NCBI GenBank assembly: GCA_001643675.2 | Contig: LSRY02000051.1 | Location: forward strand, 372,001 to 436,000 | Source of the DNA: Monocercomonoides exilis PA203 | Lineage: Eukaryota > Protista > Preaxostyla | DNA: 64,000 bases | Direction of reading: 5' to 3' | In this document: positions 15,621 to 22,954 of the stretch, one piece after another | Numbering within the stretch: position 1 is the first letter of the stretch | Layout of the letters: each line of letters starts with the position of its first letter | Notes under the pieces: generated by a model | What the model was told of the DNA's origin: nothing | Seen by the model: only the letters and a program-made list of their open reading frames with translations | Databases searched by the model: none | Program-made: the position numbers and the translations under genes

Positions 15621-16185
15621 GAAAACAGAAGCGAAGGTACAAAGAAGATTCGCTATTCTTTGAAAAGAAAAAGAACAGAAATATTGATAAGGATGAGTTT
15701 GAAAAGGAAGAAAGAAATGATAACGAAAATAAAGATGATTTACAAGATGAAAAGAACGAGAAAATTAAAGAGAAAGATCATTTTGAAATTATAAGATTAC
15801 GACAAAAAAGAGAATGAGTGAAAAAATGAAAGAAAATTAGGAAAATGAAAAAGGAAAAGGAAATAGACATACGATTCTGCAATTTTTCCATCACTATTCT
15901 ATGTTAATAGTGATGATTCATTCTGTATTATAAAACACTCGCATAAAACAAATTTGTTCATCAGAATTCATAGAATATCGTTGTATTCTTTTTATCATTT
16001 ATGCAAAATTGATAAAAATTATCTTCAAAGTGAATCATTCTTCACTTAAAACTCAAAACAAATAATTATTTCATTTTGTTGACAAATTATTTATTAAACA
16101 TTTATTTATTTTATGCTTATTTTCACGCTTCCGTAGAATAATCAAAATTTCATTTATGAAATTGTCAAAAAAGGTTTGATTTTTC

Positions 16186-16579
16186 GGCATGATTTAAGAA
16201 AGGTGGGCAAAAAAATTTTATTGAAAAAATGGCAAAAAAGAGCACCCCTCCGGGTTCGAACCTTCGACTCACCAACTTGCAAGTTTGTTAGCAAGTCGCT
16301 GGTGCCGATCGGCTAGAGTGCTCTATTTTTCTATACTTTTCTTACACAAATATTTATAATAAAACCCTAACACTAAAAATTGATCAAAAAATGAACCACT
16401 TTTTTCGAGCGCAAACCCTAAAAAGAAGAGCGGGAACAAAACCCTAAGCCCAAGAACTGTTACGCTAACCCTACAACCTAAACCAAGCAACTAATACAGA
16501 GATTATTTTTGAATTTTAACCCTAAAAATATAATTATACTGGGTCAGATCAATTTTGCCCACCTTTCTTAAATATTGCC
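16186..16579. mobile_element. 394-bp Merlin/IS1595-type MITE, copy 1
   Basis: TIRs GGCATGATTTAAGAAAGGTGGGCAAAA / TTTTGCCCACCTTTCTTAAATATTGCC (27 bp, 3 mismatches). Exact 8-bp TSD GATTTTTC at 16178-16185 and 16580-16587. GG termini plus 8-bp TSD are Merlin hallmarks. Confidence 0.9.
16239..16324 (-). ncRNA. tRNA-like / Pol III type-2 small RNA unit inside the MITE
   Basis: Minus strand: terminal stem AGAGCACTC/GGGTGCTCT; A-box TAGCCGATCGG (16315-16305); B-box GGTTCGAACC (16262-16253); CT-AAC-AA anticodon-like loop; T6 run at the 3' end (16239-16234). The T-stem does not pair, so this is not a canonical tRNA. Confidence 0.6.
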
Positions 16580-16916
16580 GATTTTTCTTTTATTTACACT
16601 TTATTTTTGTGAGTGTTTTTTGTTTGTTTTATTATCATTTCCCACAATTATTATTAATTTGAATGATCTTTTCTAATTTGAATTAGGATGGTGATTTTTA
16701 ATTTTTGGCCTTTTATTTGAATTGAGTGGTATTAATTCAAATTAATAGAGGCTTATTTAAAAAACCTCAATTAATTCAAATTTCGCAACTTAATCTGCAT
16801 TGTATCTATTACAATTCTGACTAACAATTTCATTTGATTCAAAGTGATCTGATATTTCATTTACAAAAAGGGTTCTTGATCAACAAAAAAACATATCACG
16901 ATCATCACAAATCCAC

Positions 16917-19900
16917 ATGAGAAACGATACAAATTCGATGAGTAATTGTACATCTGACAGATCGGAAATGAGCAAGTGGACAGAAAATAGTGGAACTTTT
17001 GGTGATAAAGATGGAAGAACAGAGGCAATGCGACATATCATCAACACAAAAACTGAACCGCCTGAAGGGATGAGACATGACATTACTCTTGCAGATAATG
17101 ACGGATACACAATGGCCATGCTCTGGATCAAATATGTCAAAACAGAACCACCAGAGTGGATGAGACATGACAAAACAATTAAATGTGGTTCAGAAGAAAA
17201 GACAATAGACATGATATGGTTTGAATATGTGAAAACAGAGCCACCCAAGTGGATGAATTATGAAAATACAAAGAAAGACAAAAACGGAAGAACAGATGCA
17301 ATGAAATGGATTCAAGAGACAAAATCTGAACCACCAGAGTGGATGAGACACGATGTTTCTCTTGCTGATGAGGAAGGAAGAACAATGGCCATGCTCTGGA
17401 TTGAATATGTGAAGACAGAACCACCCAAGTGGATGAGGCACGATGTTACACTTGCTGATAAAAATGGAAGAGCAATGGCTATGATTTGGATAGAAAATGT
17501 TAAGATAGAACCACCTAAGTGGATGAGGCATGATAAAAAACTTTTTGATGACAAAGGAATGACAATGGCTATGTTGTGGATTCGATATGTCAATACGGAG
17601 CCACCAGAATGGATGAGACATGACAAAACAGTTGCTGATGAAGAAGGACAGACAATGGCCATGAATTGGATTGAATATGTAAAGACAGAACCACCAGAAT
17701 GGATGAGACACGGAATTAGTCTTGCTGATAAGGAAGGACAGACACTGGCCATGTATTGGATTGAATATGTCATGACAGAACCACCAGAATGGATGAGACA
17801 CGGAATTACATTAGGAATTGGAGAAAGGGGAACAATGGCTATGATGTGGATTGAATTTGTGAAAACAGAACCACTAGAATGGATGAGACACGGAATTAGT
17901 CTTGCTGATAAGGAAGGACAGACACTGGCCATGTATTGGATTGAATACGTCATGACAGAACCTCCGGAATGGATGAGACACGATGTTTCTCTTGCTGATA
18001 AGGAAGGACAGACAATGGCTATGCACTGGATTGTATATGTGAAAACAGAACCTCCGGAATGGATGAGACATGAGAAAACACTTGCAAATGAGAAAGGAAT
18101 AACAATGGCCATGTTATGGATTGCAAATGTGAAGATAGAACCTCCAGAATGGATGAATTATGATAATATGCTTCGTGATGATAATGGAAAAACAGAAGCA
18201 ATGCGTTGGATTGTTTTGAATAAAACTGAACCACCCAAGTGGATGAGACATGATATTACTCTTGCAGATAATGACGGATGGACAATGGCCATGTTGTGGA
18301 TTCAAGGAATCCAAACAGAACCGCCAGAATGGATGAGACATGACAATGAACTTGCCAATAAGAACGGAGAAACAATGTGCATGCGTTGGATAAAGGAAGT
18401 GAAGACAGAACCTCCAGAATGGATGAGACATGGAATTTCAATTAAAGGAGGATTTAGGGAACGAACAATGGCCATGCATTGGATTGAAAATGTGAAGACA
18501 GAACCTCCAGAATGGATGAGACATAATATCATGTTTCGTGATAATTATGAAAAATCAATGGCCATGCTCTGGATTGAAAATGTTAAAACAGAACCACCCA
18601 AGTGGATGAGACATGATATTACTCTTGCAGATAATGACGGATGGACAATGGCCATGTTGTGGATTCAAGGAATCCAAACAGAACCGCCAGAATGGATGAG
18701 ACATGATATTACTCTTGCAGATAATGACGGATGGACAATGGCTATGATTTGGATTAAATATGTGAAGACAGAGCCACCAGAATGGATGAGACACGATATC
18801 ACACTTTGCAGCAATAACGGACAGACAATGACCATGCTATGGATTGAATATGTGAAGACAGAACCTCCGGAATGGATGAGACACGGAATTACTCTTGCTG
18901 ATAAGGAAGGACAGACACTGGCCATGTATTGGATTGAAAATGTCAATACGGAGCCACCAGAATGGATGAGACACGGCAAAACAGTTGCTGATAGCAGAGG
19001 AAGAACAATGGCTATGCACTGGATTGTATATGTGAAAACAGAACCACCAGAATGGATGAGACACGGAATTAATCTTGTTGACGACAAAGGAATAACAATG
19101 GCCATGTTATGGATTGCAAATGTGAAGATAGAACCACCAGAATGGATGAGGCACGATATCACACTTTGCAGCAATAAAGGATGGACAATGGCCATGCTCT
19201 GGATCGAATGCTTCAAGAAAGTCATACCAGAGTGGATGATACGTGACAAAAAATTAACTGATGAAAGCGGAACAATGGCCATATTTTGGATAAAATATGT
19301 GAAGACAGAGCCACCAGAATGGATGAGACATGATATTACTCTTGCAGATAATGACGGATGGACAATGGCTATGATTTGGATTAAATATGTGAAGACAGAG
19401 CCACCAGAATGGATGAGACACGATATCACACTTTGCAGCAATAACGGACAGACAATGACCATGCTATGGATTGAATATGTGAAGACAGAACCTCCGGAAT
19501 GGATGAGACACGGAATTAGTCTTGCTGATAAGGAAGGACAGACACTGGCCATGTATTGGATTAAATATGTGAAGACAGAACCACCAGAATGGATGAGACA
19601 TAATATTACAATTAAAGGAGGATTTTGGGAACGAACAATGGCCATGGATTGGATTGAATACGTCAAGACAGAACCACCTAAGTGGATGAGACACGATATC
19701 ACACTTTGCAGCAGTAACGGACAGACACTGGCCATGCATTGGATTGAATACGTCATGACAGAACCACCAGAATGGATGAGACATAATATTACACTTGGAA
19801 AAGGAAGATGCGGCACAATGGCCATGTTCTGGATCAAATATGTCAATGCAGAACCACCAGAATGGATGAGACACGATATTACAATTAAAGATGGTGGGGG

Positions 19901-20333
19901 AGAAAAGACGATGGCCATGCTCTGGATTGAATACATCAAGACAGAACCACCCAAGTGGATGAGGCACGATGTTACACTTGCTGATAAAAATGGAAGAACA
20001 ATGGCTATGATTTGGATAGAAAATGTTAAGATAGAACCACCTAAGTGGATGAGACACGATGTTTCTCTTGCTAATAAACATGGTGAAACAATGGCCATGT
20101 CCTGGAAAATATTGGTCATGACAGAGCCACCCAAGTGGATGAATTATGAAAATACAAAGAAAGACAAAAACGGAAGAACAGATGCAATGAAATGGATTCA
20201 AGAGACAAAATCTGAACCACCAGAGTGGATGAGACACGATGTTTCTCTTGCTGATGAGGAAGGAAGAACAATGGCCATGCTCTGGATTGAATATGTGAAG
20301 ACAGATCCACCAGAATGGATGAAGACAGATTAA
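16917..20333 (+). CDS. Intronless 1138-aa tandem-repeat protein: 37 x ~30-aa Trp/Met-rich, ankyrin-like repeats (consensus EPPEWMRHDxTLxDxxGxTMAMxWIxYVKT)
   Basis: Uninterrupted 3.4-kb ORF with ~90-bp DNA periodicity. DxxGxTxAM resembles the ankyrin DxxGxTPLH turn. No signal peptide, TM segment or catalytic domain seen. Confidence 0.9.
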   Translation: MRNDTNSMSNCTSDRSEMSKWTENSGTFGDKDGRTEAMRHIINTKTEPPEGMRHDITLADNDGYTMAMLWIKYVKTEPPEWMRHDKTIKCGSEEKTIDMIWFEYVKTEPPKWMNYENTKKDKNGRTDAMKWIQETKSEPPEWMRHDVSLADEEGRTMAMLWIEYVKTEPPKWMRHDVTLADKNGRAMAMIWIENVKIEPPKWMRHDKKLFDDKGMTMAMLWIRYVNTEPPEWMRHDKTVADEEGQTMAMNWIEYVKTEPPEWMRHGISLADKEGQTLAMYWIEYVMTEPPEWMRHGITLGIGERGTMAMMWIEFVKTEPLEWMRHGISLADKEGQTLAMYWIEYVMTEPPEWMRHDVSLADKEGQTMAMHWIVYVKTEPPEWMRHEKTLANEKGITMAMLWIANVKIEPPEWMNYDNMLRDDNGKTEAMRWIVLNKTEPPKWMRHDITLADNDGWTMAMLWIQGIQTEPPEWMRHDNELANKNGETMCMRWIKEVKTEPPEWMRHGISIKGGFRERTMAMHWIENVKTEPPEWMRHNIMFRDNYEKSMAMLWIENVKTEPPKWMRHDITLADNDGWTMAMLWIQGIQTEPPEWMRHDITLADNDGWTMAMIWIKYVKTEPPEWMRHDITLCSNNGQTMTMLWIEYVKTEPPEWMRHGITLADKEGQTLAMYWIENVNTEPPEWMRHGKTVADSRGRTMAMHWIVYVKTEPPEWMRHGINLVDDKGITMAMLWIANVKIEPPEWMRHDITLCSNKGWTMAMLWIECFKKVIPEWMIRDKKLTDESGTMAIFWIKYVKTEPPEWMRHDITLADNDGWTMAMIWIKYVKTEPPEWMRHDITLCSNNGQTMTMLWIEYVKTEPPEWMRHGISLADKEGQTLAMYWIKYVKTEPPEWMRHNITIKGGFWERTMAMDWIEYVKTEPPKWMRHDITLCSSNGQTLAMHWIEYVMTEPPEWMRHNITLGKGRCGTMAMFWIKYVNAEPPEWMRHDITIKDGGGEKTMAMLWIEYIKTEPPKWMRHDVTLADKNGRTMAMIWIENVKIEPPKWMRHDVSLANKHGETMAMSWKILVMTEPPKWMNYENTKKDKNGRTDAMKWIQETKSEPPEWMRHDVSLADEEGRTMAMLWIEYVKTDPPEWMKTD

Positions 20334-22565: not shown

Positions 22566-22954
22566 GGCATGATTTAAGAAAGGTGGGCAAAATATTTTTA
22601 TAAAAAAAATGGCAAAAAAGAGCACCCCTCCGGGTTCGAACCTTCGACTCACCAACTTGCAAGTTTGTTAGCAAGTAGCTGGTTCCGATCGTTTAGAGTG
22701 CTCTATTTTTCTAAACTTTTCTCACACAATTATTAATAACAAAACCCAAACCCTATAAATCCAATAAAGATCAAGTTTTTTCAAGAGCAAACACTAAAAG
22801 GAATAGCGGGAACAAAACCCTAAGCCCAAGAACTGTTACGCTAACCCTTCAACCTAAACCAAGCAATTAATACAGAGATTATTTTAGAATTTTGACCCAA
22901 AAATATAATAATACTGGGTCAGATCAATTTTGCCCACCTTTCTTAAATATTGCC
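22566..22954. mobile_element. Merlin-type MITE, copy 2 (direct orientation to copy 1)
   Basis: Same TIRs and internal sequence as 16186-16579 with scattered substitutions. Flanks CAAAATTG / TATATCTC do not form a TSD. Confidence 0.88.
22619..22704 (-). ncRNA. tRNA-like Pol III unit, copy 2 (A-box mutated)
   Basis: B-box, terminal stem and T-run identical to copy 1. The A-box is changed to TAAACGATCGG and there is one substitution in the central hairpin. Confidence 0.45.

What the first reader, a model, noticed from the sequence alone, without database searches (positions are those of the whole stretch)
16186..16579. Merlin-type DNA MITE carrying a tRNA-like Pol III transcription unit
Seen: a 394-bp element with 27-bp GGCA- TIRs and an exact 8-bp TSD. 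Inside, an ~86-nt minus-strand unit has a terminal stem, A-box, B-box and T6 terminator. Its centre can fold as a 12-bp hairpin (CGACTTGCTAAC/GTTGGTGAGTCG) with three G-U pairs that work only on the minus strand. It also has a CT-AAC-AA anticodon-like loop, but the T-stem is broken. Known: tRNA-derived Pol III heads are typical of retrotransposed SINEs, not of cut-and-paste TIR elements. Inference: a DNA-transposon-borne small ncRNA or TFIIIC-binding cassette (panhandle architecture reminiscent of vault or VA RNAs) spread by Merlin transposase. It could act as a regulatory RNA or a portable insulator.
Basis: partly seen in the sequence, partly recalled or inferred. Interest (0 to 1): 0.82.

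Follow-up and report, generated by a model that had tools for sequence, protein, structure and literature searches.

The report
Merlin mini-transposon carrying tRNA-like gene
This is a real, recently mobile 394-bp cut-and-paste (Merlin) mini-transposon of the protist Monocercomonoides exilis, and it carries a scrambled tRNA-like gene that other, tRNA-seeking transposons treat as a real tRNA gene, a cargo not described for a DNA transposon in the papers I searched.

Summary
Window 16186-16579 is a 394-bp element with 27-bp GG-initial terminal inverted repeats (TIRs; 25/27 match) and an exact 8-bp target-site duplication (TSD). There are 6 uninterrupted copies, 3 with their own perfect 8-bp TSDs, and about 5 interrupted or truncated ones.

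It is Merlin. Its end is homologous to the 3' end of a 1509-bp autonomous element (L039) that has a DDE_Tnp_IS1595 transposase, GG termini, an 8-bp TSD and its own diverged tRNA-like unit at the same position.

The minus-strand unit (16323->16240, then T6) has a terminal stem, an A box and a B box. It is not a tRNA by ARAGORN or Rfam. It folds as a very stable rod (z -5.0, against -1.3 for the antisense strand).

Copies decay neutrally: there is no excess conservation or covariation within the family. However, 3-bp-TSD transposons that abut the 5' ends of true tRNA-Thr, Gly, Leu and Asp genes have also landed 1-10 bp upstream of this unit in at least four family copies and several sister copies.

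So the unit is probably still recognised as an RNA polymerase III (Pol III) gene. Transcription itself is untested.

Earlier agents of this scan reached the same reading on other copies of this genome.

The parts
16178..16185 (.). Left copy of the 8-bp target-site duplication, GATTTTTC
   Evidence: Exact direct repeat D6; flanks shown.
16186..16212 (+). Left terminal inverted repeat, 27 bp, starting GGCA
   Evidence: Inverted pair I1. The genome holds 16 matches to this TIR at 3 mismatches or fewer, against 0 for the reversed control pattern.
16213..16233 (.). Subterminal spacer, homologous to the subterminal region of autonomous Merlin B (L039) and of MITE B
   Evidence: Alignment A3.
16234..16239 (-). 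T6 run directly after the unit (Pol III terminator-like)
   Evidence: Sequence. It is the least variable segment among the 10 copies (pi 0.033, but only 6 nt). True tRNA genes of this genome also have T5 or longer within 0-4 nt of their 3' end.
16240..16323 (-). tRNA-like unit of 84 nt, with its 5' end at 16323. It has a terminal stem, an A box and a B box, and is predicted to fold as a rod.
   Evidence: Fold of -41.2 kcal/mol, z -5.0, against z -1.3 for the antisense strand. Not called as a tRNA. Identical in three copies.
16252..16262 (-). B-box match, GGTTCGAACCC on the minus strand (the core GGTTCGAACC is its own reverse complement)
   Evidence: Sequence. The same 11-mer occurs in the true tRNA-Leu of L065.
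16305..16315 (-). A-box match, TAGCCGATCGG, fitting TRGCNNANNGG
   Evidence: Sequence and pattern scan. The distance from A-box start to T5 end is 81 nt in both unit A and unit B.
16265..16298 (-). Central 12-bp hairpin with three G-U pairs (arms at 16287-16298 and 16265-16276)
   Evidence: Part of the minimum-energy structure, which has an ensemble frequency of 0.83.
16324..16333 (.). Insertion hot spot just upstream of the unit's 5' end. It is empty in this copy and occupied in copies C37, C38, C45 and C1.
   Evidence: Junctions, with 3-bp duplications (ATT, TTT). The same family abuts true tRNA 5' ends.
16363..16552 (+). Array region with four CCCTAA motifs on one strand. It is shared at about 85% identity with sister MITE family B and is absent from the autonomous Merlin L039.
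   Evidence: Only 2 of 20000 shuffles reach 4 or more motifs. The motif columns decay faster than the rest of the array (pi 0.205 against 0.134).
16553..16579 (-). Right terminal inverted repeat
16580..16587 (.). Right copy of the target-site duplication
22566..22954 (+). Second, older copy of the same MITE family in the window (91% identity, no intact TSD; unit on the minus strand)

Best explanation
Window 16186-16579 is a non-autonomous (MITE) member of the Merlin superfamily of cut-and-paste DNA transposons. The genome's size and contig count match the Monocercomonoides exilis Nanopore assembly. This copy is one of the youngest of a small family of about ten.

The minus-strand tRNA-like unit was not captured by the MITE. 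It is a lineage-inherited module of a clade of small autonomous Merlins, where it lies between the transposase stop codon and the 3' TIR, on the transposase strand, and ends in a T-run. It is tRNA-derived in its promoter layout (terminal stem, A box, B box, terminator) but has lost the cloverleaf, and its RNA would fold as a stable rod.

Most likely mechanism (inferred): TFIIIC binds the A and B boxes and places TFIIIB just upstream of position 16323. Pol III then makes a hairpin RNA of roughly 85-90 nt that ends in the U-tract. The same complex is what attracts the tRNA-start-site-targeting Harbinger-like transposons that have repeatedly landed 1-10 bp upstream of the unit.

Any benefit is to the transposon lineage, for example by keeping the element in open, unsilenced chromatin. 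It is not a benefit to the host at this locus, because once inserted the copies decay neutrally.

What is shown: the MITE anatomy, Merlin membership, inheritance from an autonomous element, the box architecture, and the insertion hot spot shared with true tRNA genes. What is inferred: TFIIIC/TFIIIB binding, transcription, and any benefit.
For: MITE and mobility:
- TIRs and an exact 8-bp TSD.
- Six uninterrupted copies, three with different perfect 8-bp TSDs.

Merlin membership:
- The genome gave 575 first-look candidates for PF12762, and all 150 that were scored pass the cut-off.
- L039 is a 1509-bp element with GG-initial TIRs and the 8-bp TSD TAACATAA. Its 355-aa ORF scores 83.8 bits on DDE_Tnp_IS1595.
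- Its 3' end aligns with the left end of this MITE, covering unit, T-run, spacer and inner TIR.
- The published Monocercomonoides Merlins have TIRs of 23-29 bp and 8-bp TSDs (PMC8101967).

Pol III layout kept in two diverged units:
- Units A and B align only patchily (mean column identity 68% across both families; pairwise alignment).
- Both keep an A-box match, a B-box match, a terminal stem of 9-10 bp and a T6/T7 run, and the distance from A box to terminator is the same 81 nt.
- Both fold far better than shuffles on the sense strand (z -5.0 and -5.5). True tRNAs give z -1.6 and -2.0. The antisense strands are weaker.

Treated like a tRNA gene:
- A 973-bp element with 21-bp perfect TIRs and a 3-bp TSD has 44 genomic matches.
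- Its same end abuts the 5' ends of ARAGORN-called tRNA-Thr, Gly, Leu and Asp at 7-9 nt (the Thr case is also seen by Infernal). Other copies lie in stacks next to tRNA-Ala and Asn.
- The same or related elements sit 4-10 nt upstream of unit A in copies C37, C38, C45 and C1 and upstream of unit B in L029.
- In four more B copies, 3-5 kb separate the unit from the rest of the MITE.
- The one other insertion seen in a family-A copy is a different transposon with a 7-bp TSD at a different site.
Against: - No expression data were available, so transcription is not shown.
- The unit is not recognised as a tRNA by ARAGORN or Rfam.
- Across ten copies the unit is no more conserved than the rest of the element (pi 0.150 against 0.1445). 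The rod shows no convincing covariation: 86.6% of cells are paired against 85.5% in shuffles.
- A deficit of variation in the unit among the youngest copies is marginal (0/90 against 14/304 sites, p about 0.03-0.05). It is also inflated by a recombinant patch in one copy.
- The rods of units A and B do not use positionally homologous pairs, so no cross-family covariation could be scored.
- The tRNA-seeking transposons might recognise DNA sequence, such as the A box or the terminal stem region, rather than a bound Pol III complex.
- No autonomous element with this family's own TIRs was found.
- Only two unit-bearing families could be examined here.
Confidence: 0.6

Rival explanations
1. The unit is an inert relic. 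A tRNA gene was captured long ago by an ancestral Merlin and now hitch-hikes as a decayed pseudogene with no Pol III activity. The tRNA-seeking transposons recognise leftover DNA sequence (the A box plus the terminal stem region) directly, so their insertions say nothing about transcription.
For: There is no tRNA call and no cloverleaf. There is no excess conservation or covariation within the family. Copies carry box-breaking mutations without obvious consequence. Similarity to true tRNAs is weak (z 1.6-3.8).
Against: Units A and B align only patchily, yet both keep the A box, the B box, a perfect terminal stem, an immediately adjacent T6/T7 run, the same 81-nt spacing and unusually stable sense-strand folds. 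The targeted true tRNAs (Thr, Gly, Leu, Asp) share little sequence beyond the Pol III boxes, and the insertion distance tracks the 5' end of the gene.
Confidence: 0.25
2. The unit serves the transposon through something other than Pol III. It could be a structured 3'-UTR element of the transposase mRNA, acting in 3'-end processing or stability in the way tRNA-like ends do. Alternatively it could be a subterminal hairpin used during transposition. On this view the box matches are leftovers.
For: In the autonomous element the unit lies 219 nt downstream of the transposase stop codon, on the same strand, next to the 3' TIR. The rod fold is very stable in both families.
Against: This does not explain why tRNA-start-site-targeting elements land just upstream of the unit. 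It also does not explain why a T-run follows the terminal stem directly, as at true tRNA genes. Other Merlin families of the genome (L040, L045) transpose without such a unit.
Confidence: 0.1
3. This particular copy has been co-opted by the host as a regulatory RNA gene or an insulator for the neighbouring gene at 16917-20333.
For: The copy lies 338 bp upstream of a 1138-aa ORF, and a second copy lies downstream of the same ORF.
Against: The copy is one of the youngest, with an intact TSD and a unit identical to those of two other copies. The family shows neutral decay after insertion. No orthologous comparison is possible.
Confidence: 0.03

Closest known systems
Merlin superfamily DNA transposons, including the Merlin families reported in Monocercomonoides sp. 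PA203 (PMC8101967)
   Same: TIRs starting GG and in the 23-29 bp range, 8-bp TSDs, and a relative encoding a DDE_Tnp_IS1595 transposase.
   Different: The published description has no occurrence of 'tRNA' or 'MITE' in its main text. This family is non-coding and carries a tRNA-like cassette plus a CCCTAA-motif array.
tRNA-derived SINEs
   Same: A short non-coding mobile element with a tRNA-like segment that has internal A and B boxes.
   Different: SINEs move through RNA using LINE machinery, have no TIRs, and have variable TSDs and a 3' tail. This element has TIRs and a fixed 8-bp TSD. Its unit lies internally, reads outward toward the nearer TIR and stops at its own terminator about 20 nt short of it, so its transcript cannot be the transposition intermediate.
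Small structured Pol III RNAs carried by mobile or viral genomes (adenovirus VA RNAs, gammaherpesvirus tRNA-like/miRNA units) and vault RNAs (from general knowledge)
   Same: Internal type-2 promoter boxes, a T-run terminator and a rod or panhandle fold.
   Different: There is no sequence or Rfam match. The size is different, the host is a protist DNA transposon, and the function is unknown.
tDNA and TFIIIC-bound 'extra TFIIIC' sites acting as chromatin boundaries (from general knowledge)
   Same: An A/B-box element that could recruit TFIIIC independently of tRNA function.
   Different: No binding or boundary data exist here. This is a possible mode of action only.
Pol III-gene-targeting mobile elements: yeast Ty3, Dictyostelium TRE5-A (review PMC5911963, listed, not read), and Dada DNA transposons (from my own knowledge)
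   Same: These are the closest known analogues of the elements that hit the unit: insertion at a fixed short distance from tRNA genes, in a fixed orientation, with stacking.
   Different: The elements here have TIRs and 3-bp TSDs, and one larger insert carries a DDE_Tnp_4 (Harbinger-type) fragment. They are therefore DNA transposons, not retrotransposons. They are neighbours of the finding, not the finding itself.

Membership tests
Merlin superfamily (DNA/TIR) | TIRs with a conserved terminal 5'-GG | tested here: met
   Both ends start GGCA. Other Merlins of this genome start GGC/GGT. The criterion is as stated in PMC8101967.
Merlin superfamily (DNA/TIR) | TSD of 8 or 9 bp | tested here: met
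   Exact 8-bp TSDs in this copy and in two others, each different. Autonomous L039, L040 and L045 also have 8-bp TSDs.
Merlin superfamily (DNA/TIR) | An autonomous partner encoding a DDE_Tnp_IS1595 transposase with matching ends | tested here: inconclusive
   No coding element with this family's own TIRs at 3 mismatches or fewer. The sister element L039 has a transposase scoring 83.8 bits on PF12762. It shares the subterminal spacer, the inner TIR and a homologous unit with this MITE, but its outer TIR differs.
MITE (non-autonomous TIR element) | Short, non-coding, multi-copy, with TIRs and TSDs | tested here: met
   394 bp. No ORF of 150 aa or more overlaps it. Six uninterrupted copies plus interrupted ones.
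Functional tRNA gene | Cloverleaf with an anticodon arm and T arm, detectable by tRNA finders | tested here: not met
   ARAGORN finds none at default settings. There is no Rfam tRNA match. Only an untypable call appears at 80% thresholds. The predicted fold is a rod.
Pol III type-2 (tRNA-type) transcription unit | A box and B box in the right order and spacing, with a T-run terminator | tested here: met
   The A box fits TRGCNNANNGG from unit nt 9. The B box GGTTCGAACCC starts at nt 62. T6 follows the unit directly.
Pol III type-2 (tRNA-type) transcription unit | A Pol III-dependent transcript, or TFIIIC/TFIIIB occupancy | not testable with these tools
   There is only indirect support: tRNA-start-site-targeting transposons insert at the equivalent site.
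tRNA-derived SINE | Retroposition hallmarks: no TIRs, a 3' tail or LINE-derived end, and variable TSDs | tested here: not met
   The element has 27-bp TIRs, a fixed 8-bp TSD and no 3' tail.

The most novel reading that the evidence does not exclude
A clade of Merlin DNA transposons has kept a tRNA-derived Pol III gene as a working part of the transposon. This would be either a TFIIIC/TFIIIB-bound module that keeps the element in open chromatin, or a Pol III-made hairpin RNA that acts on silencing. If so, a cut-and-paste transposon lineage would spread active Pol III genes around a eukaryotic genome and thereby create new landing pads for tRNA-targeting transposons.
Probability: 0.3. Interest if true: 0.8.

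Novelty: new variant of a known kind. Interest (0 to 1): 0.62.

Why it matters
tRNA-like Pol III modules are known as the heads of retrotransposed SINEs. I found no description of one as inherited cargo of a cut-and-paste transposon lineage in my literature searches.

If the unit is active, Merlin elements scatter Pol III genes and TFIIIC sites through a gene-dense protist genome. That has three consequences. It could reshape chromatin boundaries. It makes new targets for transposons that home in on tRNA genes. It also offers a natural experiment on what such transposons recognise: a scrambled unit that keeps only the boxes, terminal stem and terminator is still hit.

It also helps to annotate the 35% of the M. 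exilis assembly reported as unclassified repeats (PMC8767320).

Tried and rejected
- tRNA detection. ARAGORN at default settings and with introns, and Rfam at E<=10 and at gathering score, gave nothing. The unit is not a tRNA gene or a recent pseudogene.
- Origin from a specific tRNA. Global alignments to six true tRNAs of the genome gave only weak scores driven by the boxes (z up to 3.8). BLAST of the left half found only family copies. No donor could be named.
- Excess conservation. Per-region diversity over 10 copies showed none. The deficit among the youngest copies is marginal.
- Covariation. None within the family. A MAFFT alignment of units A and B gave no shared structure, because their rods are not in register.
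- An autonomous element for this family. A TIR pattern search at 3 mismatches or fewer and a left-half search found only MITE copies.
- Relatives outside the genome. The L039 transposase found nothing in the metagenome collection.
- More unit-bearing families. A sequence model of units A and B found 27 clear genomic matches (10 A, 17 B) and one weak one that I could not read. A motif scan of the 76 loci and of the window found only A, B and true tRNAs.
- Telomere-like motifs as a functional array. They are enriched (2 of 20000 shuffles) but decay faster than their surroundings, so I did not build on them.

Full report
**What is in the sequence**

Window 16186-16579 is bounded by a 27-bp inverted repeat at 16186-16212 and 16553-16579. 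The two arms match at 25 of 27 positions and both start GGCA. The element is flanked by an exact 8-bp direct repeat, GATTTTTC.

The minus strand reads as follows, from 16323 to 16240. It has a terminal stem (9 pairs in the predicted fold). It has an A-box match (TAGCCGATCGG) starting at nt 9 and a central 12-bp hairpin with three G-U pairs. A B-box match (GGTTCGAACCC) starts at nt 62. Six T follow directly after the 3' half of the stem.

ViennaRNA folds these 84 nt as one rod of -41.2 kcal/mol with an ensemble frequency of 0.83. No shuffle out of 200 folds as well (z -5.0). The opposite strand reaches only -26.4 kcal/mol (z -1.3).

No cloverleaf is present:
- ARAGORN finds no tRNA in the whole window.
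- Rfam gives nothing at E<=10 around the site or at gathering score over the window.
- ARAGORN reports only an untypable 'tRNA-???' when its thresholds are lowered to 80%.

**It is a mobile family**

The window is contig 49, bases 372001-436000, of an assembly of 82.3 Mb in 101 contigs. Those figures match the Nanopore assembly of Monocercomonoides exilis (PMC8767320). The name is my inference from that match; the lead came from earlier notes of this scan.

The genome holds six uninterrupted copies at 86-100% identity. Four more copies carry the left half with the unit (C37, C38, C45, C34), one A-like copy (C1) has its left part displaced, and one is truncated (C11). Three copies have perfect 8-bp duplications with three different sequences, which shows independent insertions. 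A second, older copy lies in this window at 22566-22954.

**It is Merlin**

The genome gave 575 first-look candidates for the IS1595-type DDE domain, and all 150 that were scored pass the curated cut-off. One of the loci fetched, L039, is a complete element of 1509 bp with these features:
- 24-bp TIRs starting GGCA/GGTA and the 8-bp TSD TAACATAA;
- an intact 355-aa ORF scoring 83.8 bits on DDE_Tnp_IS1595;
- downstream of the ORF on the same strand, a tRNA-like unit ('unit B') followed by T7, a spacer and the 3' TIR.

Its TIRs are those of a sister MITE family ('B'). Family B has 8-bp TSDs and shares the right half of the present element at about 85% identity. The last 180 bp of L039 align with the left end of the present element through the unit, the T-run, the spacer and the inner part of the TIR.

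The published survey of Merlin reports more than 100 copies and at least 7 families in this organism. TIRs there are 23-29 bp and all families give 8-bp TSDs. The paper's main text has no occurrence of 'tRNA' or 'MITE' (PMC8101967).

I found no coding element with this family's own outer TIR. The partner transposase of family A is therefore unknown or lost.

**The unit is inherited, diverged, and keeps a Pol III layout**

Units A and B align only patchily (mean column identity 68% across both families; pairwise alignment). Even so, both keep:
- an A-box match and a B-box match;
- a perfect terminal stem made of different sequences;
- a T-run directly after the stem;
- exactly 81 nt from A-box start to the end of T5.

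Unit B also folds as a rod: -44.1 kcal/mol and z -5.5, against z -4.6 for the antisense strand. In the MITE version the values are z -3.9 and -2.9. Two true tRNAs of the genome give z -1.6 and -2.0.

Not all Merlins carry such a unit. L040 and L045 do not. No donor tRNA can be named.

**What the copies say about constraint**

Over ten copies, nucleotide diversity in the unit (0.150) equals that of the whole element (0.1445). The B-box and T-run side is somewhat lower and the A-box side higher.

On the predicted rod, 86.6% of cells are paired against 85.5% in shuffled controls, and only two pairs have double changes. The three youngest copies have no difference in the 90 nt of unit plus terminator, against 14 differences in the other 304 nt. 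The p value is only about 0.03-0.05, and the wider comparison is inflated by a family-B-like patch in the second window copy.

Inserted copies decay neutrally, and nothing suggests a host function at this locus. That test does not address selection in the active transposon lineage, where the cross-family retention described above is the relevant evidence. That evidence rests on two families only.

**Independent evidence that the unit is treated as a tRNA gene**

Three family-A copies are split at the same place, 1-10 bp upstream of the unit's 5' end, by unrelated inserts with 3-bp duplications. A fourth, A-like copy (C1) has the same kind of junction.

One insert is a 973-bp element with perfect 21-bp TIRs starting AGAACTTG. 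It has 44 matches in the genome. Its flanks show the following:
- ARAGORN finds true tRNA-Thr, Gly, Leu and Asp genes whose 5' ends lie 7-9 nt from the same end of the element, always in the same relative orientation.
- The Thr case is also seen by Infernal.
- Most other copies lie in stacks of like elements joined by repeated AGT triplets, with tRNA-Ala or Asn at the end of two stacks.

A related element sits 6 nt upstream of unit B in L029. In four further B copies, 3-5 kb now separate the unit from the rest of the MITE. A larger insert of this kind carries a DDE_Tnp_4 (Harbinger-type) fragment.

The only other insertion seen in a family-A copy is a different transposon with a 7-bp duplication at another site.

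The targeted tRNAs share little beyond the Pol III boxes, and the insertion point tracks the 5' end of the gene. The simplest reading is that the targeting elements recognise the Pol III initiation complex, as Ty3 does, and that the unit assembles it. Direct recognition of box DNA cannot be excluded.

**Verdict**

The Merlin-MITE reading is sound. The 'Pol III unit' reading is supported by architecture and by transposon targeting, but not by any expression data. The 'regulatory RNA or insulator' idea has no support at this locus.

I put 0.6 on a unit that still binds the Pol III machinery, 0.25 on an inert relic recognised by sequence, and 0.1 on a non-Pol III role for the transposon. Host co-option gets very little.

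The CCCTAA motifs are enriched (2 of 20000 shuffles) but decay faster than their surroundings.

Earlier agents of this scan reached the same reading on other copies. I used their notes as leads and re-tested the organism, the Merlin link, the autonomous source and the tRNA targeting on this family.

**Limits**

A metagenome search for related transposases found nothing.

Noticed in passing
L047-L076 (for example L050:1422-2471, L055, L065, L072); in this family L034:669-1641: A family of non-coding elements of about 970 bp has 21-bp TIRs (AGAACTTG...) and 3-bp TSDs. Its members sit 7-9 nt upstream of true tRNA genes in one orientation and stack there with repeated AGT junctions. A second type with ends like AGTGGGGGA...CCCGGG shares the same sites. 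A 4-kb insert in L031 carries a DDE_Tnp_4 fragment (L031:3243-3584).
   Followed up: partly
window 22566-22954: A second, older copy of the same MITE (91% identity, no intact TSD) lies in the same orientation on the other side of the 1138-aa repeat-protein ORF (16917-20333). Its segment at about element nt 205-230 looks like sister family B rather than A, which suggests recombination or conversion between the families.
   Followed up: partly
window 16363-16552; L012-L016, L018, L020, L021, L024: The CCCTAA-motif array is shared at about 85% identity by MITE families A and B, whose TIRs and units differ far more. It is absent from the autonomous Merlin L039. The MITEs therefore look like mosaics that exchanged an internal module.
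   Followed up: partly
L059:1390-1500, and the same in L060 and L063: A tRNA-like sequence with a good B box is not called by ARAGORN at default settings. It is also abutted by the tRNA-targeting element, and the locus is present in three near-identical copies on contig 91.
   Followed up: no
L032:1103-4241: A 3.1-kb element with a 7-bp TSD (CGTGAAC) and ends resembling ...GCCTTTGCGAC / GTCGCAGGGGC... is inserted in the array part of the C34 copy. It is a different, unclassified transposon.
   Followed up: no
G000:C2:395678-395774: A weak match (28 bits) to the sequence model of units A and B. It may be a third, more diverged unit.
   Followed up: no
L040:1048-2982 and L045:876-2360: Two Merlin copies share TIRs (GGTWATTGCACAATATACGACCG) and have perfect 8-bp TSDs. 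They carry no tRNA-like unit, which shows that the unit is confined to part of the Merlin diversity of this genome.
   Followed up: partly
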